Source: Obrimoposthia wandeli (taxonomy: Eukaryota). From it: DNA of 64,000 bases. The stretch is from positions 1 to 64,000 of the forward strand of contig CDROCS010001564.1 in assembly GCA_977020255.1 (NCBI GenBank), written 5' to 3'. Shown here in pieces: positions 19,237 through 36,753 of the stretch. A program made the position numbers and the translations under genes. The stretch's first letter is position 1, and the number at the start of each line of letters is the position of its first letter. The notes beneath the pieces were generated by a model. That model saw only the letters and a list, made by a program, of their open reading frames with translations, ran no database searches and was not told the DNA's origin.

Positions 19237-19989
19237 TTAACGATTGCTTAGCAAGAAGCTCCCTCGGCTGAATTTAGAGGCCAACACATGAAAGCCATTT
19301 TTACTGTAGTCATAATGTGCCAACCTTTCTTCAATAGGGCTCTTAGTTGCGAGAGACACTGTGAAGTCACCATTACGGGTCGTATAAGTCAAATATCTGC
19401 TCTCTGTCTTTAAAATTTTCCCCTTAGAAAACTCATACTGAGAACCCCAACGACCATTAAATATATTTTGGTCAAGCCCGGTACCTCTTAATTTCGCAGT
19501 AGATTCCATCACCGTCCAAAGAGAATAAAAATACCGCTTCCTTTTTTCACCTTGAAGAAACACTAATTTTTCAAGCTCCAACGGAGATAAGTACTGCTCA
19601 GAAAAATCAATAAAAGGTCGTTCTCGTACATGCTGTTCAATATCAACGCCGATAGGATTATTCAATGATACGGCCGCTACAACCCGATCTTTACTATGAG
19701 ATATGGATAAATAGACTTGGCCTTCAGGCGGAGGGTTAATCAAGACCGGTGCTGTTCCTAAGCCTTGATCAATCACCCAATACCCTTCAGCTTTCCCAAA
19801 TAAACATGTCAATCCCATGCGTAATAGATAGTGTCCCGCCAGGTATTGTTGCTGCCTTAGGGGTTTATTATAAGCACTAAACAGCTCCTTTTCTGGTTCA
19901 CTTAAGCACTGTTCTGCACGCTCAAAAAAGGCCTGACTCAGACCTGTAAATTGACAGTTAATAATAATGACATGACTCATTAAACTCAT
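19237..19989 (-). CDS. Sfp-type 4'-phosphopantetheinyl transferase
   Basis: YLSISHS, IGVDIE, FYSLWTVMESTAKLRGTGL; divergent from the ACP/KS operon. Confidence 0.85.
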   Translation of the reverse strand: MSLMSHVIIINCQFTGLSQAFFERAEQCLSEPEKELFSAYNKPLRQQQYLAGHYLLRMGLTCLFGKAEGYWVIDQGLGTAPVLINPPPEGQVYLSISHSKDRVVAAVSLNNPIGVDIEQHVRERPFIDFSEQYLSPLELEKLVFLQGEKRKRYFYSLWTVMESTAKLRGTGLDQNIFNGRWGSQYEFSKGKILKTESRYLTYTTRNGDFTVSLATKSPIEERLAHYDYSKNGFHVLASKFSRGSFLLSNR

Positions 19990-20129
19990 GACTCCTAGAT
20001 CGATCGGTCACATATTAGGACTGTGGTTCGATGATTGATAATGCTATTATTGCCGCTTGAAAATAGATTTTATAATAAATAGTTGCCGCATATAGCAATA
20101 ATCCGTTAAAGCAGTGGAAGATTAGGTCG

Positions 20130-20879
20130 ATGACCCGCATTTACATTAAAAATTGGTCAGCATGGACGCCTAATATCAAGCTCAAAGAAAACTGGGTGCT
20201 GTGGGCAAACAACCAACCTACAAACTCCTTTTCCGACGATCTCAATATTTCAGATGTCCCCGCAATGCTACGTCGACGTCTCAGTAATCTCGGTAAAATG
20301 GCACTTGCTTGTGCAAACGATACCGAACAAAGTATTCCTCAACGTCCTAGTTTATTCTGCAGTCGTCATGGCGAACTCGCTCGATCTATCGGCTTACTAA
20401 CCAGCCTTGCTCAAGGTGAATTATTATCACCCACCCAATTTAGCCTGTCTGTTCATAATGCCATTGGCGGTATGCTATCTATTAATAGGAAAGATTCTAG
20501 TAATATTACTGCCATCGCGGCCGCTGAAAATATGGTACCAACCGCGCTGTTAGAAGCCAGTTTGGTCATGCAAGAGCAGGGATGCGATGAAATATTGGTC
20601 GTCATTTATGATGATGCTCTTCCAGAACCTTATTCCACTCAGACAGTTGCTCCTGATCCAGCTTATGCTTTGGCTCTTGTTTTAACGAATGTCGCATCAG
20701 AGATAGAACTCGACTTATCAATAGTTTTACCATTAGAAACTGCTATTAATAAAGAGACTGTAGACGACCAGGCAGAGCCTCAGGCATTTTCGTTCATTAG
20801 ATTTCTGCTAGGCCAAGAACCATTATTACAATTGGCCAACCCGCAAACTTGCTACCAACTTAATAAAGTTGAGCATTAA
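20130..20879 (+). CDS. Beta-ketoacyl synthase chain-length factor (ApeC-like)
   Basis: PAMLRRRLS, FCSRHGEL, SPTQFSLSVHNAIGG; truncated KS fold with no recognisable catalytic motif. Confidence 0.85.
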   Translation: MTRIYIKNWSAWTPNIKLKENWVLWANNQPTNSFSDDLNISDVPAMLRRRLSNLGKMALACANDTEQSIPQRPSLFCSRHGELARSIGLLTSLAQGELLSPTQFSLSVHNAIGGMLSINRKDSSNITAIAAAENMVPTALLEASLVMQEQGCDEILVVIYDDALPEPYSTQTVAPDPAYALALVLTNVASEIELDLSIVLPLETAINKETVDDQAEPQAFSFIRFLLGQEPLLQLANPQTCYQLNKVEH

Positions 20880-20881
20880 GT

Positions 20882-21673
20882 ATGAACCTAGGTAAATACT
20901 GGCGTATTAGCGCAACCTTCATGTGCTTTTCAATATTTGGTATCGGTGGGTTTATTTTACCGTTATTCGTTAGGCCCTTATTATGGATTTTCATCAGGCA
21001 TTCAGACCAACGCCACCGAATAGGCAAAGCCTGTATCCATTATAGCTTTAGAGCATTTGTGGAGATGATGCAGTTTTTAGGGGTTATCAATTATCGTATT
21101 AGTGGTTTAGAGCACCTCACATCGTCAGGCCATTTAATTTTAGCCAACCATCCAACACTGATCGATGTTGTGATGTTAATTGCCTTTATTAAAAATTCTG
21201 ACTGCGTTGTCAAAGGTAGCTTATTGAACAACCCGCTAATAGGTGGCTCTCTTGTTATGGCAGGCTATATTGCCAATGACAATCCGACAGAGGTCATTAA
21301 GCAGGCAGCTCATTCTTTACAGCAGGGAAATAATGTCATTATTTTTCCTGAAGGCACTCGCACGACACGTGATCAGTCATTGAAATTCAAACGTGGTGCC
21401 GCAAATATTGCCCTAACCTCAGCTGCGGATATCATACCGGTCATAATCCAGTCGAATCCAGCGGCACTCAGTAAAGAACACTATTGGTACGAAGCTGCTA
21501 ATTCAAGAGTCGCGATTTCTATCAATATTAAGCAAGCCCTGAATAGTGATGAGCTTGCTCAGGGCGAACGTACACCTCACTCTTCAAGACAACTTACTCG
21601 CGATCTTGAGCGGTATTTCTCAGAAGCTCTGTCTCAGCAGCAATACCCAAATAAAACTAATAATGAACATTAA
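20882..21673 (+). CDS. PlsC-family acyltransferase (ApeD-like)
   Basis: LANHPTLID (HX4D), IFPEGTRT. Confidence 0.88.
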   Translation: MNLGKYWRISATFMCFSIFGIGGFILPLFVRPLLWIFIRHSDQRHRIGKACIHYSFRAFVEMMQFLGVINYRISGLEHLTSSGHLILANHPTLIDVVMLIAFIKNSDCVVKGSLLNNPLIGGSLVMAGYIANDNPTEVIKQAAHSLQQGNNVIIFPEGTRTTRDQSLKFKRGAANIALTSAADIIPVIIQSNPAALSKEHYWYEAANSRVAISINIKQALNSDELAQGERTPHSSRQLTRDLERYFSEALSQQQYPNKTNNEH

Positions 21674-21684
21674 GGAATATCACA

Positions 21685-21933
21685 ATGACACATGAAGAAA
21701 TACAAGGCCGCATCACCGACGTACTGTGTGAACTATTTGAACTTAATAGCGCAGATGTGACTCCAGAATCTCGTTTATATGAAGACCTGGATATCGATAG
21801 TATTGATGCGATCGATCTTATCGTTGAACTGAAAACAATGACCGATGGTAAGAAGATTGATCCTGAAGATTTTAAAGCAGTCCGTACCGTCAACGACGTT
21901 ATCCTTGCCATTGAAAAATTAATGAATACTTAA
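21685..21933 (+). CDS. Acyl carrier protein
   Basis: LYEDLDIDSIDAIDL phosphopantetheine-Ser motif; acidic, 82 aa. Confidence 0.92.
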   Translation: MTHEEIQGRITDVLCELFELNSADVTPESRLYEDLDIDSIDAIDLIVELKTMTDGKKIDPEDFKAVRTVNDVILAIEKLMNT

Positions 21934-21937
21934 TTCC

Positions 21938-22492
21938 ATGCAAGTTTTTTTGAAAATTCTCGTAGCCGTTTTAACTCTGCTGTATCCACTGGCAATTTAT
22001 TTTGGTTTACAGCATTTCGATCCACGCCACCTAGTCTTAGTATTATTTTTTGTGGTTATCGCTCGCGCCTTAACAACCGATAAATCTGTGACTAACCACT
22101 GGCTTTGGCTGCCCATATTTTTAGTGCTTATTGGCTGGAGCTGGATTGATAACTCCGATTTAGGGCTAAAGCTTTACCCTGTCATTATTAGTGCTAACTT
22201 ATTGCTATTATTCGGTTTCAGCTTACGCTCAGGTATGCCTATTGTTGAACGCTTAGCTCGCTTGCAGGAACCTAACTTACCACCAGAAGCGGTTATTTAT
22301 ACGCGTACGGTTACAAAAATCTGGTGCGTTTTCTTTATCATTAATGGTTCTATTGCTGCTTATACCGTAGCGCTGGGTGATACTGAAATCTGGACGCTTT
22401 ATAATGGCCTTATCTCGTATATTCTCATGGGGACATTAATGGCCGTAGAATATCTAGTCCGTATGCGTGTCAAAAGGCGTATTGATGCATAG
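21938..22492 (+). CDS. COG4648-like membrane protein (ApeG-like)
   Basis: Hydrophobic; KLYPVII, PIVERLARLQEP, YTRTVTKIW, WTLYNGLISY; ape position. Confidence 0.8.
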   Translation: MQVFLKILVAVLTLLYPLAIYFGLQHFDPRHLVLVLFFVVIARALTTDKSVTNHWLWLPIFLVLIGWSWIDNSDLGLKLYPVIISANLLLLFGFSLRSGMPIVERLARLQEPNLPPEAVIYTRTVTKIWCVFFIINGSIAAYTVALGDTEIWTLYNGLISYILMGTLMAVEYLVRMRVKRRIDA

Positions 22493-24245
22493 CTCTTCCT
22501 TAAGCAGCTTTATTCCTTTAGATAGTATTCTCCTTACGGCCAGACCCCCTGAGCAAGTCTTTGCTTTCTGTCCTGCAAAGGCGATTAGCTGGCAGGTTTG
22601 GCAAGCGAGAGTTCATGCTTGGCAAGAGTGCTTAAGTCAATATAAGGAAGAGAAGTGGGCGGTTTTCCATTCTGATAGCGCTGAGTTTTCTGCCATCCTG
22701 TTTGCACTTTGGTCATTGAATAAAACCAGCTGCATTCCTGGTATTAATAATTCAGCAACGACCAAAGATCTTGAGAAGCATGCCGATGGTTTTATTGGTC
22801 AATTTGAAGGTCATATTTTTAAGCCCTATCTTCAATCAGCCACTGCTGTTTCAGATGATACTTGCTCTCTCGCGGTAATGCCTAGCAAGCTCAATATCGA
22901 ATTACCATTAATAGAGATATTTACCTCAGGCTCTTCTGGTAAACCATTAGCGATTGCCAAAACACTGACACAATTAAGCCGAGAAATTGAGAGTCTAGAA
23001 CAACTTTGGGGCTGTGATATAAACAGTGCTCGTATCGTATCGACGGTCAGCCATCAACATATCTACGGTCTATTGTTTCGTATTTTATGGCCGATATGCG
23101 CACAGCGTGCTTTTTCTCGTTTCAATTTTGAATTCATCGAAGATCTTGCCAATAAACTTAACAGTATTGGTGAAACAGTGCTTATATCGAGTCCAACGCA
23201 CTTATCTCGATTGCCAGAGGGTTTAGATAAAACTCATATACGGTCGCTAACGAAAGCAGTATTTAGCTCAGGGGCTCCGCTTAAAGAACAAGATAGCTAT
23301 CAAGCATTTGAGTTCTTTCATACAAATATTAACGAAGTCTTCGGTAGCTCTGAAACTGGTGGTATTGCTTGGCGTCAACAACATAGCAACCAATACCAGT
23401 ATTGGAACGTCTTACCTAATGTCATCTTCAAGATTGATACTGACTCATCGCGTTTACAAACTCAGTCGCCTCACTTAATGACAGACGATTGGTATCTAAC
23501 CTCTGACCTTGCCCAAGGTATCGACCAACATAGTTTTAAACTACTGGGTCGCAGTGACAAAATCGTAAAAGTTGAAGGTAAGCGCTTATCCATAACGGCC
23601 ATGGAAAATCGTTTAATGGCCGAGACTTCTATTGAAGAAGCTCGCATTATTACAATCGATACAAACAAGCGTATTGAAATCGGCGCAGCCATTGTTCTTA
23701 GTACCCAAGGCCTGTGCTTATTAGCAAAAATTGGCCGTAGAGCCTTTAGTCTGCAATTAAAAGAAGCTTTGCTAACTCAGTTTGAGCGACCGCTATTACC
23801 AAGACGCTGGCGTTTTGTTGCTGAATTTAAGCGCAATAGCCAAAGCAAAGTATTACATCAGGATTTAATTGACCTATTTATGCAAACAGCTCCTCACGTT
23901 TTGCTACCTGTTATTGTAAAAACAGCGCAAGAAAATGAAAATACCGTGTTACTTGATTTGATCGTGCCGAAAGAGCTACGTTATTTCGATGGCCATTTTG
24001 ATCAGCACCCTGTGTTGCCAGGTGTCGTGCAAACTCACTGGGCTGAATACTATGCTCGTGAGCACTTTGAATTTTCTGAAAATTTCTCTGGTTTATCCAA
24101 TATTAAATTCCAACAGATTATTACACCAGGGCAGGAAGTTAAATTATTACTTTCGTTGAGCCATAAGAACGAATCCACTGCGATCAGTTTTTCTTATAGT
24201 TCCGATACCGGTAAACACGCCAGTGGTAAATTAAACTTTAGCTAG
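22485..24245 (+). CDS. AMP-dependent acyl-ACP/CoA synthetase fused to a C-terminal hot-dog dehydratase (ApeH-ApeI-like)
   Basis: FTSGSSGKP, FGSSETGGIA, GRSDKIVKVEGKR; C-terminal YFDGHFDQHPVLPGVVQ and IKFQQIITPG. Confidence 0.85.
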   Translation: MHSSSLSSFIPLDSILLTARPPEQVFAFCPAKAISWQVWQARVHAWQECLSQYKEEKWAVFHSDSAEFSAILFALWSLNKTSCIPGINNSATTKDLEKHADGFIGQFEGHIFKPYLQSATAVSDDTCSLAVMPSKLNIELPLIEIFTSGSSGKPLAIAKTLTQLSREIESLEQLWGCDINSARIVSTVSHQHIYGLLFRILWPICAQRAFSRFNFEFIEDLANKLNSIGETVLISSPTHLSRLPEGLDKTHIRSLTKAVFSSGAPLKEQDSYQAFEFFHTNINEVFGSSETGGIAWRQQHSNQYQYWNVLPNVIFKIDTDSSRLQTQSPHLMTDDWYLTSDLAQGIDQHSFKLLGRSDKIVKVEGKRLSITAMENRLMAETSIEEARIITIDTNKRIEIGAAIVLSTQGLCLLAKIGRRAFSLQLKEALLTQFERPLLPRRWRFVAEFKRNSQSKVLHQDLIDLFMQTAPHVLLPVIVKTAQENENTVLLDLIVPKELRYFDGHFDQHPVLPGVVQTHWAEYYAREHFEFSENFSGLSNIKFQQIITPGQEVKLLLSLSHKNESTAISFSYSSDTGKHASGKLNFS

Positions 24246-24296
24246 CCCTAAATAACGAATTCACATTTTATATAACTTTAAAGCAGATTTTAAATT

Positions 24297-25829
24297 ATGG
24301 TTACCTTCGACGGATCACGACTAACGATTGAAGACATTGTTAATGTTGCTCAACAAACATCTCAAGCAGAATTAAGCTCTGATACTGAGTTCCGAAAGCG
24401 TATTAGCCGAGGCAGTAGCTTCTTAGATAAGTTATTAGAAGAAGATGGTGAAATATACGGCGTAACAACAGGTTATGGCGATTCATGTACCGTTTCTATT
24501 CCGTCTGACTTAGTGACTGAACTGCCCAAGCATTTATATACGTTCCACGGCTGTGGTTTAGGTAGCATGCTATCACCTACCGCTGGCCGTGCAGCACTTG
24601 CGGTTCGCCTAACATCGTTATGCCAAGGTTACTCAGGTGTCAGCGAGAATTTATTAGAGCAGCTCGAGCGCTTATTAAAACAGGATATTATTCCTGTTAT
24701 TCCTGAAGAAGGCTCTGTGGGTGCGAGTGGTGACTTAACACCTCTTTCATATATCGCTGCTGTTTTATGTGGTGAACGTGACGTTTATTACCAAGATGAA
24801 ATTCGTCCAACAAAAGAAGTCTTTAAACAATTAAATATCTCACCGATTACATTGCGTCCTAAAGAAGGCTTAGCCATTATGAATGGTACCGCTGTGATGA
24901 CCGCAATTGCTTGCATTGCCTATAGCCGCGCTGAATATTTAGCAAAGTTAGCGACTCGAATTACCGCGTTAGTAACTTTGACAACTAAAGGTAATGCACA
25001 TCACTTTGATAAAACCTTATTCTCGGTTAAGCCTCACCAAGGCCAGCAAAAAATTGCCGCTTGGTTGCGTGATGATTTAGAAGTCGGCACTCCACCGCGT
25101 AACTCTGATCGACTACAAGACCGTTATTCATTGCGCTGCGCTCCTCACGTGATTGGTGTTATGCAAGATGCTCTACCGTGGATTAGACAGCTGATTGAAA
25201 ACGAATTAAACAGTGCCAACGACAATCCAATTATTGATGCTGAAGGTGAGCATGTTCTGCATGGTGGACATTTTTATGGCGGCCATATTGCACTCGCAAT
25301 GGATACCTTAAAAAATACAGTGGCTAACATTGCTGATCTGCTAGACCGTCAAATGGCATTAATGATGGATACAAAGTTCAACCATGGTTTACCGGCAAAT
25401 CTATCGGGAGCAGAAGGCCCACGCAAGGCTATTAATCATGGCTTTAAAGCAGTTCAAATTGGAACCTCTGCCTGGACCGCTGAAGCATTAAAATTAACAA
25501 TGCCTGCCAGTGTATTCTCTCGCTCTACTGAGTGTCATAACCAAGACAAGGTTAGCATGGGTACTATTGCAGCACGTGATTGTATTCGCGTATTACAGCT
25601 AACTGAACAAGTTGCAGCGGCTGCATTACTAGCCTCATGCCAAGGTTTAGAACTGCGCATGAAGAATAACGAAATTCAGAGTGATGATGTTTCGAATAAA
25701 ATCACTGACTTACTAGCAGAAGTTCGCACCATCAGCGCATTCATTACAGAAGACCGCGCACTTGATAAAGAACTACGAATAGTAATCGATGGCATTCAGA
25801 ACAAAACTTGGGATTTATACTCGGACTAA
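24297..25829 (+). CDS. MIO-dependent aromatic amino-acid ammonia-lyase (HAL/PAL/TAL family)
   Basis: IYGVTTGYG, GSVGASGDL (MIO-forming ASG), QDRYSLRC, HNQDKVSMG. Confidence 0.92.
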   Translation: MVTFDGSRLTIEDIVNVAQQTSQAELSSDTEFRKRISRGSSFLDKLLEEDGEIYGVTTGYGDSCTVSIPSDLVTELPKHLYTFHGCGLGSMLSPTAGRAALAVRLTSLCQGYSGVSENLLEQLERLLKQDIIPVIPEEGSVGASGDLTPLSYIAAVLCGERDVYYQDEIRPTKEVFKQLNISPITLRPKEGLAIMNGTAVMTAIACIAYSRAEYLAKLATRITALVTLTTKGNAHHFDKTLFSVKPHQGQQKIAAWLRDDLEVGTPPRNSDRLQDRYSLRCAPHVIGVMQDALPWIRQLIENELNSANDNPIIDAEGEHVLHGGHFYGGHIALAMDTLKNTVANIADLLDRQMALMMDTKFNHGLPANLSGAEGPRKAINHGFKAVQIGTSAWTAEALKLTMPASVFSRSTECHNQDKVSMGTIAARDCIRVLQLTEQVAAAALLASCQGLELRMKNNEIQSDDVSNKITDLLAEVRTISAFITEDRALDKELRIVIDGIQNKTWDLYSD

Positions 25830-25832
25830 ATT

Positions 25833-26261
25833 ATGTTGAAAGCATCTGTTGAAATTTTAGTACCCTTTCATGATGTCGATACCATGGAAATTGCATGGCA
25901 TGGACATTACGTTAAGTATTTTGAAATAGCCCGTTGTGAGCTATTGAATCAACTGGGTTATAACTACAAACAGATGCGCGACTCAGGATATTCTTGGCCT
26001 GTTATCGATTTGCACATTCGCTACCCCGGTCCTGCAACCTTTGATCAAACAATCATTGTGACTGCCATGCTAAAAGAATGGCAAAACCAACTAAAGATTC
26101 AATATGAGATTCGAGACTCGATTACGCATAAAAGACTTACCAAGGGTCATACCATTCAAGTCGCTGTCGATATGGAAAACCAACAGATGTGTTATGAATC
26201 TCCTAAGGTCCTGCTCGATATAATGAGTGAACTAGAAAATAGCCGTGAGCAAGATTCATGA
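25833..26261 (+). CDS. 4HBT-family acyl-CoA thioesterase (ApeK-like)
   Basis: VPFHDVDTMEIAWHGHYVKYFEIAR. Confidence 0.88.
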   Translation: MLKASVEILVPFHDVDTMEIAWHGHYVKYFEIARCELLNQLGYNYKQMRDSGYSWPVIDLHIRYPGPATFDQTIIVTAMLKEWQNQLKIQYEIRDSITHKRLTKGHTIQVAVDMENQQMCYESPKVLLDIMSELENSREQDS

Positions 26262-26839
26262 AGTTAATGCATTTCTTTATCTCTACCTTGCTACTCGCAA
26301 GTCTTATTATTTCAAATACTTTTGCATTATCAGAGGGGGAGCTGGATCGATTTAATCTTATTCTCTCTCAGCAAAATCATGTAGCCGGAGATTTTGAGCA
26401 GATAAAACATTTATCCATTTTACCGATGCCTATTCTGAGCTCAGGTAACTTTAAGTTTGACCAAGAAACTGGATTAAACTGGATCGTTTTAAAGCCTATT
26501 TATAGTCAGATGGTATTAGATGATAGCGGAATTCGCCAGATTCAAGACGGTAAGGTTGTATGGTCTTTGGATGCAAGCCAGCCAGCAGCCAGCCATATCT
26601 CTACGATTATTGCTTCTGTCTTAGCCGCGGATTGGGAAAAGTTAAGTGATCACTTTATCTTATCATCTGAAGAGCAGGGGAGTAATTGGATCATAAACTT
26701 ACTGCCTAAAAGCCAAGTTCTTTTAACCGCCATCTCTCGCATACAAATGACAGGCTCAGCTCAATTACAGAAAATGACCTTATTTGAAGCGAACGGTGAT
26801 AGCACGGTTATTATTTTCAATATTCGTCTAAGCTCCTGA
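26258..26839 (+). CDS. LolA-like outer-membrane lipid/lipoprotein carrier (ApeL-like)
   Basis: Signal peptide, GDFEQIKHL, LSSGNFKF...GLNW; ape position. Confidence 0.8.
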   Translation: MKLMHFFISTLLLASLIISNTFALSEGELDRFNLILSQQNHVAGDFEQIKHLSILPMPILSSGNFKFDQETGLNWIVLKPIYSQMVLDDSGIRQIQDGKVVWSLDASQPAASHISTIIASVLAADWEKLSDHFILSSEEQGSNWIINLLPKSQVLLTAISRIQMTGSAQLQKMTLFEANGDSTVIIFNIRLSS

Positions 26840-26847
26840 GAGCACTC

Positions 26848-29229: not shown

Positions 29230-29809
29230 AACGGTCTTTTTAATTCTTATATGCCATGGGCTATTAGCCTGTAGTACGTTTTCAAAGCCGCTGGTACTGC
29301 CAGAGTTTCCTTTGTTTGACCCTGCAGATTTGGGGCAAGAGATTCAATTAACTCAACTGGTTACCAGCCAAGTGAATGATTTACCCCAAGTTATGATAGC
29401 CGCGTGGTCAGTTGAAAATGGAAGCATGAATTTAGTCGGCTTAACGGTTACTGGACAAGAAATTTTACGCTTACAATACGACGGAGAGAATCTCATTGAA
29501 GAATACAGTCCGTTATTAAATGTGCCTATTAACGGCCGCATTGTTATTTCTCAAATCCAGTTGTCTTACTGGCCGCTTGATTCAATCCAGCGTCAACTTG
29601 CCGATTCTTCTTGGAAATTACTTCAAGATGAAAATCAGAGAATCATTACTTTCAAAGATCGTTCGATCACGACCATTAAAGAAAAGTCCAACACGGTAAT
29701 GCCAGAATTATTCAGCAAAGTATGGCCTGAACTTGTTTTACAAAGCCCGATATTTAATCAAAATTTAACGATTAAAACGATCTCAGTAGGAAAGATAAAT
29801 GAAAAATGA
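29216..29809 (+). CDS. DUF3261-like lipoprotein (ApeN-like)
   Basis: Lipobox LLAC, QIQLSYWP motif; ape position. Confidence 0.75.
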   Translation: MKLIKTVFLILICHGLLACSTFSKPLVLPEFPLFDPADLGQEIQLTQLVTSQVNDLPQVMIAAWSVENGSMNLVGLTVTGQEILRLQYDGENLIEEYSPLLNVPINGRIVISQIQLSYWPLDSIQRQLADSSWKLLQDENQRIITFKDRSITTIKEKSNTVMPELFSKVWPELVLQSPIFNQNLTIKTISVGKINEK

Positions 29810-31001
29810 GCCCGTTTATTTAAATCACCTTGGCTTGATATGCGCCTTGGGTTCTGATCATAAATCAATTTCAAATAAGTTATTTACTGGCTATTCAGAC
29901 AATTTAATACAGACCTCTGAATTCAGTGAGAAGTCTGTTTACTTGGGTAAAGTATCTGAATCTCTACCTGCATTAGAAGAGTTTCCTACTGTTGAACGCA
30001 CACGTAATAATCAGTTATTAAAAGCGGCTTTCAATCAAATTAAAGCGACGCTTACCTCAGACTATGGTCATATAAAAAAAGAACGAATTGGCATTGTGAT
30101 TGGCACCAGTACAAGTGGCATTGCTGAAGGCGAAAAAGCATTAGCCGAGCAAATAAAAACAGGTGACCTACCGGAAGGGTTTGACTACTCCATGCAAGAA
30201 ATGTCTGCCCCTGCCACAGCTCTTGCTGGCTGGGTTGGATCAAAAGGTCCTTGCTATGTTATTTCTACGGCCTGCTCCTCCAGTGCAAAGGCATTGGCCA
30301 GCGCACGCAGGCTTATTCGTTCTGGCATCTGTGATCTGGTAATCGCTGGCGGTGTCGATTCTTTAGCAGGCTTAACCGTCAATGGGTTTGCAGCTTTAGA
30401 TTCTGTAAGCAAAGGAATTTGTAATCCCTACAGCGCATCAAGAGACGGTATTAATATTGGTGAAGGTGCCGCCCTGTTTATGGTCAGTAATAAAGATCTT
30501 ACGACTAATCAAACTCCTGCAATAAGCCTTGCGGGTATCGGTGAATGTTCTGATGCTCATCATATTTCTGCACCAGAACCAGAGGGTAAAGGTGCCGAGC
30601 AGGCCATGCAGTTAGCAATGAGTAACGCTAATATATCCAAACAAGATATTGGCTATATTAATATGCACGGTACCGCTACGATTCAGAATGACCGTATGGA
30701 AGGGCGAGCCATTTATCGCTTATTTAAAGATTCCGTGCCTTGCTCTTCTACCAAAGGCTATACAGGTCATACCTTAGGAGCAGCAGGTGCCATTGAAGCC
30801 GCTTTCTGCTGGCTATTGTTAGCCAATGATAATCCTCATAAAATGCCCGTACATTTATCAGACCATGCAATAGACCCAGAACTTGAACCTATTTCGTTGG
30901 TAAAAGACAATACAGATAATCAGCCCATCAAGTACGCAATGAGTAATTCATTTGCTTTTGGTGGCAATAATATTTCGTTAATTTTAGAGCGCCGATCATA
31001 A
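29799..31001 (+). CDS. Beta-ketoacyl-ACP synthase (ApeO-like)
   Basis: STACSSS, HGTAT, GHTLGAAG, SNSFAFGGNN. Confidence 0.92.
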   Translation: MKNEPVYLNHLGLICALGSDHKSISNKLFTGYSDNLIQTSEFSEKSVYLGKVSESLPALEEFPTVERTRNNQLLKAAFNQIKATLTSDYGHIKKERIGIVIGTSTSGIAEGEKALAEQIKTGDLPEGFDYSMQEMSAPATALAGWVGSKGPCYVISTACSSSAKALASARRLIRSGICDLVIAGGVDSLAGLTVNGFAALDSVSKGICNPYSASRDGINIGEGAALFMVSNKDLTTNQTPAISLAGIGECSDAHHISAPEPEGKGAEQAMQLAMSNANISKQDIGYINMHGTATIQNDRMEGRAIYRLFKDSVPCSSTKGYTGHTLGAAGAIEAAFCWLLLANDNPHKMPVHLSDHAIDPELEPISLVKDNTDNQPIKYAMSNSFAFGGNNISLILERRS

Positions 31002-31456
31002 TGACGTACCCCATTGATGAATTGGTTCCACATTCCGGAACCATGAGTTTATTAGACAGGGTGGTCGAGTCTGGTGAAGACTGGCTGACTGCTGAAGTCA
31101 TTATTGGCCCTGAAACTTTATTTCTGAACAATGATACAGTTCCAGCTTGGGTCGGTATCGAATATATGGCACAAGCCATTGCAGCCTTCGCTGGCACTCT
31201 CGCTAAAGCGAATCAACAAAATGTTAAACTGGGGTTTTTACTCGGTACGAGAAAATATACCTCTTCCGTTTCAGATTTTCCTATCGGCACTCGATTATTA
31301 ATTCATGTCGAGAAGGAGTTGCAATCTGACGATGGCCTCGGCGTTTTCAATTGCTCTATTAATGCAGATAATATTTTAGTAAATGCTCGACTTAATGTAT
31401 TTCAACCAAAGAGTGCCGAGCAATATTTTGCAGAAGAAGGATTAAAAAGTGAATAA
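31001..31456 (+). CDS. Hot-dog dehydratase partner (ApeP-like)
   Basis: ELVPHSGTMSLLD, EYMAQAIAAFAG, GFLLGTR. Confidence 0.85.
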   Translation: MTYPIDELVPHSGTMSLLDRVVESGEDWLTAEVIIGPETLFLNNDTVPAWVGIEYMAQAIAAFAGTLAKANQQNVKLGFLLGTRKYTSSVSDFPIGTRLLIHVEKELQSDDGLGVFNCSINADNILVNARLNVFQPKSAEQYFAEEGLKSE

Positions 31457-32180
31457 CGATAAGACAATTTTAGTGACAGGTTCAAGCCGAGGTATCGGCC
31501 GTGCGATTGCATTAAGATTAGCAAAGGATGGCTTTGATATTGTTATTCATTGTCGCTCTGGATTAGAACAGGCGCAAGAAACACAAGCAGGAGTTGAAGC
31601 GCTAGGCCGTAAGGCCCGCATTATTCAATTTGATATTGCTAATCGAAAAGAAACTCATGATGTATTAATGGCTGACATCGAAGAGTTTGAAATGTATTAC
31701 GGTATTGTCTGTAATGCAGGATTAACACGTGATAACGCTTACCCAGCGATGAGTCCTGAAGACTGGGACTTAGTTGTACACACCAATCTCGATGGCTTCT
31801 TTAATGTCACTCATCCTTTAACAATGCCGTTAATACGTCGTCGTAAGCCTGGGCGTATCGTTGCGATATCTTCAGTATCAGGTGTTATTGGTAATCGTGG
31901 GCAAGTAAATTACAGCGCATCGAAAGCAGGGCTGATTGGTGCCTGTAAAGCATTAGCCGTTGAACTGGCTAAGCGTGCGATTACTGTTAACTGTGTTGCA
32001 CCAGGGTTAATCGAGACCGAGATGGTTGAAAATGTGCACATTGAAGAAGCTCTAAAAATGATCCCTGCAAAGCGTATGGGTCAGCCTGAAGAAGTCGCTG
32101 CAGCTGTCAGCTTTTTAATGGCTGAGGACGCAGGTTATGTCACTCGCCAAGTAATATCCGTAAACGGTGGTATGTGTTAA
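31449..32180 (+). CDS. fabG: 3-oxoacyl-ACP reductase (ApeQ-like FabG paralog)
   Basis: TGSSRGIG, CNAG, NYSASK, NCVAPG. Confidence 0.9.
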   Translation: MNNDKTILVTGSSRGIGRAIALRLAKDGFDIVIHCRSGLEQAQETQAGVEALGRKARIIQFDIANRKETHDVLMADIEEFEMYYGIVCNAGLTRDNAYPAMSPEDWDLVVHTNLDGFFNVTHPLTMPLIRRRKPGRIVAISSVSGVIGNRGQVNYSASKAGLIGACKALAVELAKRAITVNCVAPGLIETEMVENVHIEEALKMIPAKRMGQPEEVAAAVSFLMAEDAGYVTRQVISVNGGMC

Positions 32181-33409
32181 TGAACAGAGTTGTAATCACT
32201 GGCATGGCTGGCTTGTCTCCTATCGGACTTGATTGGGAAACAATTTCTCATAACCTTAAAAGCATGAAAACAGGTATTCGTTATATTGAAGATTGGGAAA
32301 AGTACCAAGGCTTAGATACTCGATTGGCTGCACCGATAGAAAATTTTGAAAAACCAGAACATTACACACGCAAACAAACTCGCAGCATGGGGCGTGTTGC
32401 ATTGATGGCAACTAGAGCAACGGAATTAGCGTTAGAGCAGGCTGGTTTATTAAACGACGAACGTATTCAAGATGGTCGTATGGGGGTCTCATTTGGCTCC
32501 TCTAGCGGCACGCCTGATGCCGTTGCAGACTTTGCCCAGATGAAACTTAATAACAGCACTCGTGGGTTAACTGCGACGTCTTACATTAAAATGATGGCTC
32601 ATACGGCCCCGGTAAATATCGGAGTTTTCTTTGGTTTAAAAGGCCGAGTGATCACTACATCTAGCGCTTGTACTTCGGGTAGCCAAGGTATCGGTTATGC
32701 TTATGAAGCGATAAAATTTGGTCGCCAAGAAATGATGGTAGCCGGTGGTTGTGAAGAGTTATGCGCGACGGAAGCTGCTGTCTTCGATACGTTATTCGCT
32801 ACTAGCACCAAAAACGATACTCCAGATAAAACACCATCGCCGTTTGATAAGAATCGTGATGGCCTGGTCATCGGTGAAGGAGCAGGTGCCCTAATTTTGG
32901 AGTCGCTCGAGTCTGCACAATCTCGAGGGGCAAAGATTCTTGCAGAAATCGTTGGTTTTGGCAGCAACTCTGATGGCACCCACGTAACTCAACCAAACGC
33001 GAAGACCATGCAAAAAGCGATGGAATTAGCATTACAAGATGCGAATATTAGCGCCGATAAAATTGGTTATGTTAGTGCTCACGGCACATCAACTGATCGT
33101 GGAGACGTTGCTGAAACGACAGCGACCTTTAGTGTATTCGGTAAAAACATCGCCATTAGTTCAATGAAAAGTTTTACCGGGCATACCCTTGGCGCTTGCG
33201 GTGCTTTAGAAGCCCAGGCATCGATCAATATGATGAAAGAAGGCTGGTTTCATGCAACGGCCAACTTAACCGAAATTGATCCTGAGTGTGGCGATTTGGA
33301 TTACATCAGAGATGAAGTTCGTGAGCTACATACAGATCATGTCATGAGTAATAATTTCGCTTTTGGTGGCATTAACACATCGCTAATTTTTAAACGCTGG
33401 CAAGACTAG
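32180..33409 (+). CDS. Beta-ketoacyl-ACP synthase II-like (ApeR-like)
   Basis: SACTSG, HGTST, GHTLGACG, NNFAFGGIN; ATG at 32180 overlaps the fabG stop. Confidence 0.92.
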   Translation: MNRVVITGMAGLSPIGLDWETISHNLKSMKTGIRYIEDWEKYQGLDTRLAAPIENFEKPEHYTRKQTRSMGRVALMATRATELALEQAGLLNDERIQDGRMGVSFGSSSGTPDAVADFAQMKLNNSTRGLTATSYIKMMAHTAPVNIGVFFGLKGRVITTSSACTSGSQGIGYAYEAIKFGRQEMMVAGGCEELCATEAAVFDTLFATSTKNDTPDKTPSPFDKNRDGLVIGEGAGALILESLESAQSRGAKILAEIVGFGSNSDGTHVTQPNAKTMQKAMELALQDANISADKIGYVSAHGTSTDRGDVAETTATFSVFGKNIAISSMKSFTGHTLGACGALEAQASINMMKEGWFHATANLTEIDPECGDLDYIRDEVRELHTDHVMSNNFAFGGINTSLIFKRWQD

Positions 33410-33435
33410 CCGTTTGGTAATTTTCATAACGCCAT

Positions 33436-33476: not shown

Positions 33477-33512
33477 GTGCATGAAATAAAAACGTCTTAT
33501 TTTTTAATACAC

Positions 33513-34592
33513 TTAAGCTTTCTTAACGCACTTAAACAAAGTATGGCCTGCACCGATATCATCGATATCCGTTTCAACCATTAAGCCTGCCTGATGCAGA
33601 AGCTTAATCATGTCTTTAGAGTGATACATACGGCTGTTGCCGTTCGCCATCGCTGTAAAGTATAACGACGTCGCATTAATACTATAAGCCGCGGCTTCAT
33701 AGCGCTGACGATCCCAGTAAGTGTCCATAATATACAGGCTCGTATCACCTGTCATGGCCACTGCTGCACGTTTGAGAATACTTAAAATTTGCTCTTCAGA
33801 GAAACAGTCTAAAAACTGGCTCATCCAAATAACGTCTGCACCTTCAACAAAAGGCGCTTCATTATCGAGAAGATTAATTGGGTGACCGCTAATACGATCG
33901 GCAAACCCTTGTTCTTCAGCATTTTCTTTCATTACCTTAATTTGCTGTGGCAAATCCATGATGGTGACATTAACGTCTTCATCAAAGCGCACGCAAGATA
34001 ATGCCCATTTCCCAGTATTCCCACCTACATCAACAAGATGCTTTGGCTTATCTTTAAACACAATCGGCAATACTTCTGGGAAAGAATGATCTGAATAATA
34101 ATGATCAAATTTAAACCAACTTTCTTTCGCTTTTTCAGGCAGTGATGTTAGAGCAGGGTAGATTGTTGGCCAATCACCAAAGACTTTTAAGCCTTCTGGT
34201 TTACCATTACGAATAGCAGCTTCCATCTCATACAAGCCTTCGTAGCAAACGTCTTGAGTGAAGTCTAAGTTAATGCGAGCCATCTGGTCACCCAATAAAA
34301 AGTAACCTACTTTATCAAGTACATAATGAGTGTCGTCTTTTAACCAAACAACATTCATCGATAACGCCATATCCAATAGGACCTTTACGCCATATTCTGA
34401 AATACCTGTTTTTTCATTCAAGTACTCAGCATTTGCCCCTGCTTGACCCGCTTCAGAAACGGCTTCAAGTATTCCTGTACGGATTAACGTTACACCCGTT
34501 TGAAAAGCAAAGGGAGCAAAGGCAATTTTTTGCGCTTCTAATTTTGCATTTATTGCAGAAATTGTATGTGGCTTAGAATAAAGGGTCATCAA
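33513..34592 (-). CDS. Class I SAM-dependent methyltransferase (ApeB-like)
   Basis: LVDVGGNTG, IMDLP, IWMSQFLDCF; N-terminal dimerisation helix region. Confidence 0.88.
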   Translation of the reverse strand: MMTLYSKPHTISAINAKLEAQKIAFAPFAFQTGVTLIRTGILEAVSEAGQAGANAEYLNEKTGISEYGVKVLLDMALSMNVVWLKDDTHYVLDKVGYFLLGDQMARINLDFTQDVCYEGLYEMEAAIRNGKPEGLKVFGDWPTIYPALTSLPEKAKESWFKFDHYYSDHSFPEVLPIVFKDKPKHLVDVGGNTGKWALSCVRFDEDVNVTIMDLPQQIKVMKENAEEQGFADRISGHPINLLDNEAPFVEGADVIWMSQFLDCFSEEQILSILKRAAVAMTGDTSLYIMDTYWDRQRYEAAAYSINATSLYFTAMANGNSRMYHSKDMIKLLHQAGLMVETDIDDIGAGHTLFKCVKKA

Positions 34593-34753
34593 AAAAACCT
34601 AATCGTCTGAATATATATAGAAAAAGAAAGCATAATGCCATAAGCACCTATAGAAAACTATGTTCCATAATATAGGTGTAATATGGCATAATTAATTTAT
34701 TGATCCGGTGAAAATCACTCGACAAATGCCATTACATATTAAAGGATTCACCC

Positions 34754-35008
34754 TTGAACACTTTGGAACTTGAGCTTAAAACGCTAATTATTGAAACCTT
34801 AAATTTAGAAGATTTAACAGCTGCTGATATTAAAAGCGAAGATGCTTTATTTGGTGAAGGCTTAGGCTTAGATTCAATCGATGCGCTTGAGTTGGGTGTT
34901 GCTCTTAAGAAGCAGTACAACATAACTTTAGATGCCGATTCTGAAGAAACGCGCGCTCATTTTGCATCAGTATCTGCACTGGCTAAATTGGTAAGCTCTT
35001 ACCAATAA
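34754..35008 (+). CDS. Second acyl carrier protein
   Basis: LFGEGLGLDSIDALELG; TTG start preceded by AAAGGA. Confidence 0.9.
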   Translation: MNTLELELKTLIIETLNLEDLTAADIKSEDALFGEGLGLDSIDALELGVALKKQYNITLDADSEETRAHFASVSALAKLVSSYQ

Positions 35009-35068
35009 TTGCTAGCGAGCCAAATAACTCTTTATTTGGCTTCTTTATTCTTTTTCCTTGGCTCTGTT

Positions 35069-35818
35069 ATGTCCTATTGCTTCTTAATTCCTTGCTACAA
35101 CCATGGTAAAACCTTGCGAGCTACGTTAGAAAACTTACAAGTTTTTGGCCTAACGGTTCTCGTAATTGATGATGGTTCGGATGCAGAAAATGCTGCATTA
35201 ATTAATGCAGCATGCTCAGACTTTGATTTTGCTGACTTACATGTAAAAGGTAGAAATAGTGGCAAGGGCGGCGCCGTAATAACAGGAATGCTATTAGCCT
35301 CGGCTAGGGGGTTTAGTCATGCTGTTCAAATTGACGCCGATGGCCAACACAATATCAATGATGCTCACCTATTAATTGATAAATCTGAACGAAACCCTAA
35401 TACCTTAATTTGTGGCCGACCTATTTATGACGAGTCTATTCCTAAGCACCGTTATTATGCTCGATATATAACTCATGTTTGGGTATGGATAGAGACCTTG
35501 TCTTTTTCAATACCTGATTCAATGTGTGGATTTCGGGTATACCCACTATCGGCCTGTAAAACCCTCCTTAATAGCACTAAGGTAGGCAAATATATGGATT
35601 TTGATGGTGAGTTGATTGTCCGTCTTTATTGGCAAAAAGTACCGATGATATTCATCCCGACTAAAGTCATTTACCCTGAAAATGGTAGTTCTAACTTTAG
35701 AGCACTACAGGATAATGTTTTGATCAGTTGGATGCATACACGGTTATTTTTCGGGATGGTATTAAGAAGCCCTAAACTCATAATGAGAAAATTATCTCGT
35801 CATCAAATTGAGAAATAA
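35069..35818 (+). CDS. Glycosyltransferase family 2 (N-terminal half of ApeJ-like)
   Basis: LIPCYNH, VIDDGS, GKGGAV, QIDADGQH, DSMCGFRVYP; likely ATG at 35069. Confidence 0.88.
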   Translation: MSYCFLIPCYNHGKTLRATLENLQVFGLTVLVIDDGSDAENAALINAACSDFDFADLHVKGRNSGKGGAVITGMLLASARGFSHAVQIDADGQHNINDAHLLIDKSERNPNTLICGRPIYDESIPKHRYYARYITHVWVWIETLSFSIPDSMCGFRVYPLSACKTLLNSTKVGKYMDFDGELIVRLYWQKVPMIFIPTKVIYPENGSSNFRALQDNVLISWMHTRLFFGMVLRSPKLIMRKLSRHQIEK

Positions 35819-35820
35819 TT

Positions 35821-36753
35821 ATGAGAAAAATTCCAAACCAACATTGGTCCAAAGTCAGCGAACGTGGAAGTTCACTCGGGATTTCAACTTTATATACTAT
35901 CTACAATATTTTTGGTAAACCCAGTTTTTACCTGATCCTTATTCCTGTTTTGTTATTCTTTTATTTAACAGGCAAAGAACAACGCCTAGCGGTTATAGCA
36001 TTTCAAAAAAAAGTCACTCAGCAGCGTAACTTAAAAGGCTTACCAACTCCCAAGCTCAACCCCTTTTTACAGTATTTTGAATTTGGCCGTTCAGCATTAG
36101 ATAAAATCACAGCATGGCTTGGTAAAATTACTCTTGAAGATATGACCTTTAATAACAAGCCGCAAATGCTAGAGATTGTAGCTAAGCAAAGAGGAGGGGT
36201 TATTTTAACGTCTCACTTGGGCAATATGGAGGTGTGTCGAGCACTTAGCGAAGGTTTTCCAGGTTTAAAAGTAAACGCGCTTGTTCATACTCAGAATGCA
36301 GTAAAGTTTAATCAGCTATTACAAACTATTTCACCGACCTCTGGTATCAACCTGATAGAGGTTAGTGAGCTGGGGCCTGATACTGCTATGAAGTTATTAG
36401 ATAAGATAGAGCAGGGTGAGTACATTGCCATTGTGGGCGATAGAACCTCGATTGCTCAACATGGTCGTATTATTGAAGCTGATTTCTTAGGAGAAACAGC
36501 GTTCTTTCCTGAAGGGCCCTTTATTTTAGCCTCTATTTTAAAAAGTCCTGTTTATTTTATGAGCTGTATTCGTTCTGAAAAGGGATTTTCAGTTGATTTC
36601 ATTCCATATAAAGACAAACTTATTCTTATACGCAAACAACGACAAGAGAGCTTACAGGTTGCTGTCCAGGACTATGCAAACTGGCTTTCCGACTTGGCTA
36701 TTAAAGCGCCGTATCAATGGTTTAATTTTTTTGATATTTGGGAAAGAAAATAA
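35821..36753 (+). CDS. LpxL-like acyltransferase (C-terminal half of ApeJ-like)
   Basis: HWSKVSERGS, SHLGNME, VGDRT, FPEGPF, PYQWFNFFDIW. Confidence 0.85.
   Translation: MRKIPNQHWSKVSERGSSLGISTLYTIYNIFGKPSFYLILIPVLLFFYLTGKEQRLAVIAFQKKVTQQRNLKGLPTPKLNPFLQYFEFGRSALDKITAWLGKITLEDMTFNNKPQMLEIVAKQRGGVILTSHLGNMEVCRALSEGFPGLKVNALVHTQNAVKFNQLLQTISPTSGINLIEVSELGPDTAMKLLDKIEQGEYIAIVGDRTSIAQHGRIIEADFLGETAFFPEGPFILASILKSPVYFMSCIRSEKGFSVDFIPYKDKLILIRKQRQESLQVAVQDYANWLSDLAIKAPYQWFNFFDIWERK

What the first reader, a model, noticed from the sequence alone, without database searches (positions are those of the whole stretch)
19237..36753. Rearranged aryl-polyene-like type II PKS cluster that may make an undescribed pigment-lipid
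All the hallmark ape functions are present, but the architecture differs from the E. coli/Xenorhabdus model. It is split into four transcription units (PPTase <-, main operon ->, methyltransferase <-, ACP-GT-AT ->). It has an ammonia-lyase inside the main operon, a fused synthetase-dehydratase and a split GT/acyltransferase. I saw no chorismatase and no flavin halogenase/reductase. Inference: the starter comes from a deaminated aromatic amino acid rather than free 4-hydroxybenzoate, so the head group may differ from known APEs. This is the best candidate in the window for a novel system.
Basis: partly seen in the sequence, partly recalled or inferred. Interest (0 to 1): 0.75.

Follow-up and report, generated by a model that had tools for sequence, protein, structure and literature searches.

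The report
Ordinary aryl-polyene pigment gene cluster
This is a complete, intact aryl-polyene (yellow membrane pigment) gene cluster from an Oleispira-like marine bacterium; its supposedly unusual features, above all the built-in ammonia-lyase, occur in about half of the related clusters sampled, so it is an ordinary member of a known family with only a small local gene reshuffle.

Summary
Window 19237-36753 holds 19 intact genes in four orientation blocks. They comprise every E. coli ape function from ApeB to ApeR, plus a PPTase and a MIO ammonia-lyase. The claim of novelty does not hold. All 25 named species loci that encode this lyase have it inside an APE cluster, at a fixed slot between the GT/acyltransferase genes and ApeK. 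These loci span Gamma-, Beta- and Alphaproteobacteria and a Spirochaetales MAG. In an even sample of 401 genomes of the same class, 15 of about 30 APE loci carry the lyase. The ApeH-ApeI fusion (18 of 26 loci), the separate GT and acyltransferase genes (22 of 25) and the divergent PPTase are also common states. Two papers list an ammonia lyase among the genes of the characterised Aliivibrio fischeri APE cluster (MIBiG BGC0000837). On an ApeR tree, lyase-bearing and lyase-less clusters interleave, so the lyase is an accessory gene. It probably acts as a tyrosine ammonia-lyase, as FlxA does in flexirubin synthesis. That would give the usual 4-hydroxyphenyl head group, not a new one. Only the move of ApeE-GT-AT to behind ApeR is lineage-specific, and it is shared with Oleispira-like relatives. 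The scan's notes hold no earlier aryl-polyene finding on other DNA of this assembly. Verdict: a new member of a known kind, of low interest.

The parts
19237..19989 (-). Sfp/HetI-type 4'-phosphopantetheinyl transferase, divergent from the main operon
   Evidence: PF01648 46 bits; weak HetI/AcpT hits. A divergent PPTase sits in the same position in 14 of the 25 species loci. It is only 42% identical to the Oleispira MAG's copy.
20130..20879 (+). ApeC, ketosynthase chain-length factor
   Evidence: PF13723 198 bits; 34% identical to E. coli ApeC
20882..21673 (+). ApeD, lysophospholipid acyltransferase
   Evidence: PF01553; 37% identical to E. coli ApeD
21685..21933 (+). Acyl carrier protein, orthologue of E. 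coli ApeF (the second ACP)
   Evidence: PF00550; 53% identical to ApeF
21938..22492 (+). ApeG (COG4648 family); no Pfam hit
   Evidence: 57% identical to E. coli ApeG over residues 77-181; conserved in all related loci
22467..24245 (+). Fusion of the ApeH aryl-acid adenylating / ACP-loading enzyme with the ApeI dehydratase
   Evidence: PF00501 + PF22818. Residues 63-474 are 28% identical to ApeH and residues 488-589 are 33% identical to ApeI. Fused in 18 of 26 related loci.
24297..25829 (+). MIO-dependent aromatic amino acid ammonia-lyase of the APE-cluster clade (probable TAL)
   Evidence: PF00221 547 bits. Has the A-S-G MIO triad, F83-H84 at the RsTAL H89-L90 switch and N-Q-D at motif 2. Lies in an APE cluster in all 25 species loci.
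25833..26261 (+). ApeK hotdog thioesterase
   Evidence: PF13279; 50% identical to ApeK
26258..26839 (+). ApeL, LolA-like carrier
   Evidence: PF03548; 27% identical to ApeL
26848..29229 (+). ApeM, RND/MMPL-type exporter
   Evidence: HpnN-like hit; 27% identical to ApeM over 778 residues
29216..29809 (+). ApeN, DUF3261 (LolB-like)
   Evidence: PF11659 77 bits; 26% identical to ApeN
29799..31001 (+). ApeO, elongating ketosynthase
   Evidence: PRK09185 494 bits, over its cut-off; 42% identical to ApeO; Cys-His-His triad present
31001..31456 (+). ApeP dehydratase
   Evidence: PF22817 75 bits; 34% identical to ApeP
31449..32180 (+). ApeQ ketoreductase
   Evidence: SDR families; 59% identical to ApeQ
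32174..33409 (+). ApeR, initiating ketosynthase
   Evidence: PRK09116 706 bits, over its cut-off; 59% identical to ApeR; Cys-His-His triad present
33513..34592 (-). ApeB / FlxJ-family SAM methyltransferase (ring methylation), convergent with ApeR
   Evidence: NF053543 530 bits against a 560-bit cut-off; 53% identical to E. coli ApeB
34754..35008 (+). Acyl carrier protein, orthologue of E. coli ApeE (the first, starter-loading ACP), relocated
   Evidence: PF00550; 58% identical to ApeE. In 22 canonical loci this ACP lies directly after ApeD.
35009..35818 (+). GT2 glycosyltransferase, equivalent to the N-terminal half of E. coli ApeJ, relocated
   Evidence: PF00535; 53% identical to ApeJ residues 6-249; weak PpgS (polyprenyl-P-GalNAc synthase) hit
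35821..36753 (+). LpxL-type acyltransferase, equivalent to the C-terminal half of E. coli ApeJ, relocated
   Evidence: PF03279; 37% identical to ApeJ residues 243-550

Best explanation
This is a functional aryl-polyene lipid (APE) biosynthetic gene cluster of the common lyase-bearing proteobacterial type. It lies next to oriC on a contig of an Oleispira-like gammaproteobacterium. The steps below are inferred unless marked as shown. The PPTase activates the two ACPs. The MIO lyase deaminates L-tyrosine to 4-coumarate. The ApeH domain adenylates the aryl acid and loads it on the ApeE-type ACP. ApeR initiates the chain, and ApeO:ApeC, ApeQ and ApeI/ApeP extend it with malonyl units into a polyene. 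The ApeB-type methyltransferase methylates the 4-hydroxyphenyl ring. ApeK, ApeD, the GT2 and the LpxL-type acyltransferase attach the chromophore to a glycolipid anchor. ApeL, ApeM and ApeN move it to the outer membrane, where it acts as an antioxidant pigment. What is shown here: the gene content, one-to-one orthology with E. coli apeB-R, intact catalytic residues, and conservation of the lyase at a fixed position in many APE clusters. What is specific to this lineage is only the relocation of ApeE-GT-AT to behind ApeR, with the methyltransferase inverted between them.
For: Domain content. One-to-one orthology to E. coli ApeB-ApeR at 26-59% identity. KS Cys-His-His triads intact. Same layout and same flanks in L003, L004 and L006 (an Oleispira MAG). 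The lyase lies inside an APE cluster in 25 of 25 species loci. It is also in the cluster in Aestuariicella and Endobugula. In 15 of 33 ApeP-positive genomes from an even sample of 401, a lyase lies 5-8 kb upstream of ApeP on the same strand. The lyase clade has conserved F/Y-H and N-Q-D motifs that differ from the HutH S-H and N-Q-E-D. No urocanase was found in the two relatives tested. Precedent from FlxA, a proven TAL with HAL-like motif 1 and TAL/PAL-like motif 2: PMC3992019. Ammonia lyase is named as a characteristic gene of APE Vf (BGC0000837). The APE core-gene definition and the GalNAc-phosphoglycerol anchor: bioRxiv 10.1101/2020.12.19.423268.
Against: No enzyme of this lyase clade has been assayed in any paper I could reach, so tyrosine specificity is an inference. 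The residue aligned to the RsTAL selectivity His89 is Phe, which is the PAL-like state. UbiC is present in the relatives, so 4-hydroxybenzoate could still be the starter. Family scans cannot tell a 4-HBA loader from a 4-coumarate loader, since E. coli ApeH and the window's domain both score about 75 bits on TIGR02372. I could not compare the cluster directly with the A. fischeri sequences. No expression data were found.
Confidence: 0.85

Rival explanations
1. The starter is still 4-hydroxybenzoate from UbiC, as in E. coli. The lyase is then an optional helper, for example a second precursor supply or a route whose 4-coumarate is shortened elsewhere. The product would be the same as in lyase-less clusters.
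For: UbiC is present in the Oleispira MAG and in Marinobacter. On the ApeR tree the lyase state needs 9 changes, at least 3 of them forced by well-supported branches, with no other visible change in gene content. The ApeH domain is an orthologue of E. coli ApeH.
Against: The lyase is very strongly conserved (93% against 42-67% for many neighbouring genes). It sits at a fixed slot in the operon across four bacterial classes. This argues for a core role where it is present. No chain-shortening enzyme is encoded in the cluster.
Confidence: 0.2
2. The lyase is a phenylalanine ammonia-lyase, so cinnamate is the starter and the head group is an unhydroxylated phenyl ring. That would be a head group not known from APEs.
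For: Phe83 aligns with RsTAL His89, and the best-matching chain (2o78) carries Phe at that position. From my own knowledge of Watts et al. 2006, the H89F change converts this TAL into a PAL.
Against: The motif here is F-H, not the F-L of PALs, and this rule already failed for FlxA (PMC3992019). The cluster keeps an ApeB-type ring methyltransferase at 53% identity. In known APEs that enzyme methylates next to the phenolic OH.
Confidence: 0.1
3. The lyase is an ordinary histidine ammonia-lyase (HutH) that merely sits among the ape genes.
For: It scores 417 bits against the HutH model TIGR01225, below the 539-bit cut-off. Many databases name its homologues histidine ammonia-lyase.
Against: Motif 2 is N-Q-D, not the N-Q-E-D of HutH. 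It is 31-34% identical to true HutH paralogues from related genomes. No urocanase was found in G001 or G002, where it is the only MIO lyase. It lies at a fixed position inside APE operons.
Confidence: 0.03
4. This is a truly new pigment-lipid system.
For: No product has been characterised from this lineage. The ApeE-GT-AT relocation was seen only in the Oleispira-like group.
Against: Every gene has an APE orthologue. The gene set is shared with dozens of species. The relocation changes gene order, not gene content.
Confidence: 0.04

Closest known systems
APE Vf cluster of Aliivibrio (Vibrio) fischeri ES114 (MIBiG BGC0000837; Cimermancic et al. 2014)
   Same: It is a proteobacterial APE cluster that, according to two papers, includes an ammonia lyase along with type II PKS genes and acyl/glycosyltransferases (PMC5851621; PMC8719888). 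Heterologous expression showed that cluster is sufficient for APE production (PMC8253772).
   Different: I could not fetch its sequence, so identity and gene order were not compared. The window's ApeE-GT-AT block is relocated relative to the canonical order seen in 22 species loci.
E. coli CFT073 / Xenorhabdus doucetiae ape cluster (ApeA-R)
   Same: All functions from ApeB to ApeR are present as one-to-one orthologues at 26-59% identity. The order C-D-(ACP)-G-H-I ... K-L-M-N-O-P-Q-R is kept.
   Different: The window adds a PPTase and a MIO lyase and lacks ApeA. ApeH and ApeI are fused, and ApeJ is split into GT2 and acyltransferase genes. ApeB is inverted behind ApeR, and ApeE has moved together with the GT and AT genes.
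Flexirubin cluster of Chitinophaga pinensis / Flavobacterium johnsoniae (FlxA TAL, FlxY ligase, FlxJ methyltransferase, DarA/DarB)
   Same: An in-cluster MIO lyase combined with an aryl-acid-activating enzyme feeds a type II FAS-like polyene synthase. The methyltransferase scores 530 bits on the FlxJ family model. The lyase shows the same mixed motif pattern that was described for FlxA.
   Different: The lyase is far below the FlxA cut-off (354 against 700 bits). No DarA or DarB is in the window: the only DarB-model hit is a 26-bit match on ApeR. The host is a gammaproteobacterium, and the anchoring genes are of the E. coli ape type.
Lyase-bearing APE clusters of Cellvibrionaceae and relatives (Pseudomaricurvus/Aestuariicella, Simiduia, Teredinibacter, Endobugula, Marinobacter)
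   Same: They have the same gene set, including the divergent PPTase, the fused H-I, the split GT/AT and the lyase. Identities are 68-77% for the lyase and 66-78% for the KR/KS genes. They are the nearest neighbours on the ApeR tree.
   Different: Those clusters keep everything in one operon, with both ACPs after ApeD and GT-AT before the lyase. Some add a flavin halogenase (L001) or place the methyltransferase between ApeM and ApeN (L018, L021, L030).

Membership tests
Aryl polyene (APE) biosynthetic gene cluster family | The core genes used by Grammbitter et al. 2020 to call an ape BGC: KS (apeO, apeR), ACP (apeE, apeF), CLF (apeC), DH (apeI, apeP), KR (apeQ), transporter (apeM) | tested here: met
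   All nine are present, each best-matching the corresponding E. coli protein.
Aryl polyene (APE) biosynthetic gene cluster family | An aryl-acid-activating enzyme (ApeH) and lipid-anchoring and export genes (ApeD, ApeJ, ApeK, ApeL, ApeN) | tested here: met
   ApeH domain at 28% identity, ApeD 37%, ApeJ halves 53% and 37%, ApeK 50%, ApeL 27%, ApeN 26%.
Aryl polyene (APE) biosynthetic gene cluster family | Intact catalytic residues in the ketosynthases | tested here: met
   The Cys-His-His triad aligns with E. coli ApeR and ApeO.
Aryl polyene (APE) biosynthetic gene cluster family | Production of an aryl-polyene chromophore (yellow pigment absorbing near 430-440 nm) | not testable with these tools
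   This needs expression and LC-UV/MS. No RNA run holding the stretch was found.
Flexirubin cluster (Bacteroidota) | DarA/DarB dialkylresorcinol genes and a FlxA-equivalog TAL | tested here: not met
   No DarA or DarB is in the 64-kb window, and DarB models hit only ApeR, at 26 bits. The lyase scores 354 bits against the 700-bit FlxA cut-off (350 bits). The flanks are proteobacterial.
Xanthomonadin-type cluster | XanB2 chorismatase (3-/4-HBA synthase) and ring halogenation genes | tested here: not met
   No such domains occur in any cluster ORF. A halogenase is present in the relative L001 but not in the window.
Tyrosine ammonia-lyase (functional class) | MIO-forming Ala-Ser-Gly triad, Gln (not Glu) at motif 2, and the selectivity residues at motif 1 | tested here: inconclusive
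   The A-S-G triad and N-Q-D are present. Motif 1 is F-H, which is neither the TAL H-L, the PAL F-L nor the HAL S-H. FlxA shows that motif 1 does not predict the substrate. Enzyme activity cannot be tested here.

The most novel reading that the evidence does not exclude
The F/Y-H clade of MIO lyases embedded in proteobacterial APE clusters has, as far as I could find, never been assayed. It might not be a TAL. A PAL-like or other specificity would give roughly half of gammaproteobacterial APE clusters, this one included, a head group or initiation route different from the 4-HBA paradigm established in E. coli and Xenorhabdus.
Probability: 0.1. Interest if true: 0.45.

Novelty: new member of a known kind. 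Interest (0 to 1): 0.15.

Why it matters
The finding adds little. It places a standard antioxidant membrane-pigment cluster in an Oleispira-like, biofilm-dwelling marine bacterium, and it documents a minor operon reshuffle. The more useful by-product is the general picture. About half of the sampled gammaproteobacterial APE clusters carry a conserved, distinct MIO lyase at a fixed position, and it has been gained or lost repeatedly. I found no published assay of its substrate. The 4-HBA initiation model from E. coli and Xenorhabdus may therefore not describe half of the family. That question belongs to the whole family, not to this window.

Tried and rejected
(1) My first guess was a Bacteroidota flexirubin cluster, from the GC content of about 42%, the TAL and the FlxJ-like methyltransferase. 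I rejected it because the flanks are gyrB-recF-dnaN-dnaA, rnpA-yidD-yidC-mnmE and glyQS, the nearest relative is an Oleispira MAG, no DarA/DarB is present, and the lyase is far below the FlxA cut-off.
(2) The genome search 'relatives' failed because G000 has no relatives in the collection. I worked through handles from named loci instead.
(3) The promoter and terminator scan was at chance level and uninformative.
(4) Rfam found nothing in the window.
(5) NCBIfam cannot separate 4-HBA loaders from 4-coumarate loaders.
(6) The Cimermancic 2014 paper is not held in the library, so the A. fischeri gene content is cited second-hand.
(7) The TAL literature I read gave no motif information for FlxA-type enzymes.
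(9) I did not use structure prediction, read laying or the large representative search. The family assignment was never in doubt, so they would not have changed the verdict.


Full report
**1. What is there**

ORF listing with Pfam and NCBIfam scans confirms 19 intact genes in window 19237-36753.
- A Sfp/HetI-type PPTase lies on the minus strand (19237-19989).
- A 13.3-kb plus-strand block (20130-33409) encodes a chain-length factor, a lysophospholipid acyltransferase, an ACP, a 184-aa protein with no Pfam hit, an AMP-ligase fused to an ApeI-type dehydratase, a MIO aromatic ammonia-lyase, a hotdog thioesterase, a LolA-like protein, an RND/MMPL-like exporter, DUF3261, a ketosynthase, an ApeP dehydratase, a ketoreductase and a second ketosynthase.
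- A methyltransferase lies on the minus strand (33513-34592).
- A plus-strand ACP, GT2 and LpxL-type acyltransferase unit follows (34754-36753).

No halogenase or chorismatase domain is present. The 'four transcription units' rest on orientation only, because the promoter and terminator scans were no better than shuffled sequence.

**2. Context**

The flanks are glyQ-glyS, a HAD hydrolase and an NhaC-type antiporter on one side. On the other side are cytochrome c', gyrB-recF-dnaN-dnaA, and then rnpA-yidD-yidC-mnmE. This is the origin region of a gammaproteobacterial chromosome.

The nearest named relative is an uncultured Oleispira MAG, with 93% lyase identity and 70-84% DNA identity.

G000 itself is a 1.35-Gb assembly of 6,912 contigs. 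It holds about 24 different intact bacterial MIO lyases and one exon-split lyase. It is therefore a host-plus-microbes or metagenome-like assembly, and the window is one bacterial member of it. The same DNA occurs at 88-96% of sampled words in four biofilm-metagenome runs of an independent study.

**3. Orthology with the characterised E. coli cluster**

I fetched an E. coli ape locus and compared proteins. Every window gene except the PPTase and the lyase has one best E. coli partner.

| Window gene | E. coli partner | Identity |
|---|---|---|
| CLF 20130-20879 | ApeC | 34% |
| LPLAT 20882-21673 | ApeD | 37% |
| Upstream ACP 21685-21933 | ApeF | 53% |
| 184-aa protein 21938-22492 | ApeG | 57% |
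| Fusion 22467-24245 | ApeH / ApeI | 28% / 33% |
| Thioesterase | ApeK | 50% |
| LolA-like | ApeL | 27% |
| Exporter | ApeM | 27% |
| DUF3261 | ApeN | 26% |
| KS 29799-31001 | ApeO | 42% |
| Dehydratase 31001-31456 | ApeP | 34% |
| KR | ApeQ | 59% |
| KS 32174-33409 | ApeR | 59% |
| Methyltransferase | ApeB | 53% |
| Downstream ACP 34754-35008 | ApeE | 58% |
| GT2 | ApeJ N-terminal half | 53% |
| LpxL-type acyltransferase | ApeJ C-terminal half | 37% |

The ketosynthase Cys-His-His triads are intact. All core genes that Grammbitter et al. use to define an ape BGC are present. Membership in the APE family is therefore met on every feature that sequence can test.

**4. Are the 'differences' unusual?**

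They are not.
- The lyase has hundreds of homologues at 70-77% identity in marine Gammaproteobacteria.
- A scan of named species genomes returned 25 loci. Annotating them against the window's proteins shows the lyase inside an APE cluster in all 25.
- The canonical order is [PPTase(-)] C-D-ACP-ACP-G-H/I-GT-AT-lyase-K-L-M-(MT)-N-O-P-Q-R.
- The loci span Cellvibrionaceae, Marinobacter, Pokkaliibacter, Methyloglobulus, Rubrivivax (Beta), Ruegeria (Alpha) and a Spirochaetales MAG. Aestuariicella and Endobugula show the same layout.
- ApeH and ApeI are fused in 18 of 26 loci. GT and AT are separate genes in 22 of 25.
- A divergent upstream PPTase is present in 14 of the 25 species loci.

For an unbiased frequency I sampled 401 genomes evenly from the class of one of these relatives. 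Thirty-three carry an ApeP-like gene. In 15 of these, a MIO lyase lies 5-8 kb upstream of ApeP on the same strand. Inspecting the loci shows that three of the 33 are false ApeP hits. It also shows that the lyase, when present, always sits between the GT/AT genes and ApeK. So about half of the sampled APE clusters are of this type.

The literature agrees. PMC8719888 names ammonia lyase among the 'characteristic aryl polyene biosynthetic genes' of MIBiG BGC0000837 (APE Vf, A. fischeri ES114). PMC5851621 lists an ammonia lyase among the genes of that cluster. [quoted passage not shown]

**5. Phylogeny**

An ApeR tree of 48 loci puts the window next to the Oleispira MAG with 100% support, inside a clade made up mostly of Cellvibrionaceae. 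All members of that clade have the canonical order, so the window's arrangement is derived.

Lyase presence needs 9 changes on this tree, of which at least 3 are forced by well-supported branches. For example, lyase-less L048 and L050 are sister to lyase-bearing L059 and L061. The lyase is therefore an accessory gene within one cluster family, not the mark of a separate system.

One caveat applies. The set is enriched for lyase-bearing loci, because 25 of them were found using the lyase as the query.

**6. What the lyase probably does**

- Against RsTAL (the best PDB match), the window enzyme has the A-S-G MIO triad. It has F83-H84 at the His89-Leu90 selectivity switch and N-Q-D at the Gln/Glu motif 2.
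- Across APE-cluster lyases from four classes, F/Y-H-G-C-G and S-T-E-C-H-N-Q-D are conserved.
- The HutH-type paralogues taken from related genomes have S-H and N-Q-E-D, and they are only 31-34% identical to the window enzyme.
- The two score classes are also separate on PF00221: 511-539 bits for in-cluster lyases against 558-627 bits for the others.
- In the Oleispira MAG and in Marinobacter this is the only MIO lyase, and no urocanase was found. A role in histidine use is therefore unlikely.
- Schöner et al. showed that FlxA, whose motif 1 looks HAL-like and whose motif 2 looks TAL/PAL-like, is a specific TAL that feeds 4-coumarate into flexirubin synthesis (PMC3992019).

By analogy I infer Tyr to 4-coumarate here. 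This is also supported by the retained ApeB-type ring methyltransferase, which in known APEs methylates next to the phenolic OH. The inference is not shown. A PAL activity (Phe at the switch position) or continued use of UbiC-derived 4-HBA remain possible, since UbiC is present. Family scans cannot distinguish the loader's substrate.

In either case the expected head group is the ordinary, possibly methylated, 4-hydroxyphenyl ring.

**7. What is specific to this window**

Only two things are specific.
- The ApeE-type ACP has been taken from behind ApeD, and GT-AT from in front of the lyase. They now form one unit behind ApeR, with the methyltransferase inverted in between. Three Oleispira-like relatives share this layout (L003, L004, L006). 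A convergent methyltransferase behind ApeR also occurs in an otherwise canonical locus (L056).
- The stretch 15.5-20.0 kb (a 1092-aa ORF plus the PPTase) has no DNA match in the relative.

Neither changes the gene content.

**8. Verdict**

This is a new member of a known kind. Interest is low.

The scan's notes hold no earlier aryl-polyene finding on other DNA of this assembly. The motif is explained as the signature of the whole APE-lyase clade.

Noticed in passing
G000 as a whole (window = C1564:1-64000): The assembly is 1.35 Gb in 6,912 contigs. It holds about 24 different intact bacterial MIO lyases on separate contigs, plus an exon-split lyase on C2622 and C729. It looks like a eukaryotic host assembled together with many marine bacteria. 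The window is the oriC region of one Oleispira-like member.
   Followed up: partly
window 15681-18959 (-): A 1092-aa ORF lies between the NhaC antiporter and the PPTase. It has only a weak CarboxypepD_reg hit and no NCBIfam hit. It is absent from the relatives L003, L004 and L006, where the PPTase follows the antiporter directly, and it has no DNA match in L006.
   Followed up: partly
window 12186-13452: A low-GC stretch of about 1.27 kb (GC 0.36 in the 12-14 kb bin) lies between glyS and the HAD hydrolase. It holds only small ORFs without Pfam hits. In the relatives this spacer is about 100-120 bp. It may be a small insertion.
   Followed up: partly
G000:C2082:33008-34492 (-): This lyase passes the FlxA equivalog cut-off (828 against 700 bits). 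A flexirubin-type Bacteroidota cluster is therefore probably present elsewhere in the same assembly.
   Followed up: no
G000:C998, C4085, C506: Further MIO lyases score in or near the APE-type range (531-555 bits). They may mark APE clusters in other bacteria of the assembly.
   Followed up: no
L002 (Granulosicoccus antarcticus CP018632.1, lyase at 10001-11527): This lyase is 72% identical to the window's and has the same F-H and N-Q-D motifs. It stands alone, with no APE gene within 10 kb. The clade is therefore not strictly tied to APE clusters.
   Followed up: partly
L001/L008 (Aestuariicella/Pseudomaricurvus hydrocarbonicus), 15303-16553: A flavin-dependent (Trp_halogenase-type) halogenase lies between ApeM and ApeN in an otherwise equivalent cluster. 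This suggests a halogenated APE head group in that species.
   Followed up: no
window cluster vs L006: Divergence between the two relatives is very uneven. The lyase, methyltransferase, KR, ApeR and ACPs are 86-93% identical. The H-I fusion, ApeL/M/N, ApeC/D and GT are 56-67% identical, and the PPTase is 42%. Housekeeping flanks are about 90%.
   Followed up: partly
window 22467-31456: The same DNA is held at 88-96% of sampled words by four biofilm-metagenome runs of one independent study. Marine-sediment and ice metagenomes hold small shares of it. No run that holds it is on record as RNA.
   Followed up: no
window 35009-35818: The best NCBIfam hit of the GT2 is a polyprenyl-phospho-GalNAc synthase (PpgS; 52 bits, far below its cut-off). 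This fits the GalNAc-phosphate-glycerol anchor reported for Xenorhabdus APE lipids.
   Followed up: no
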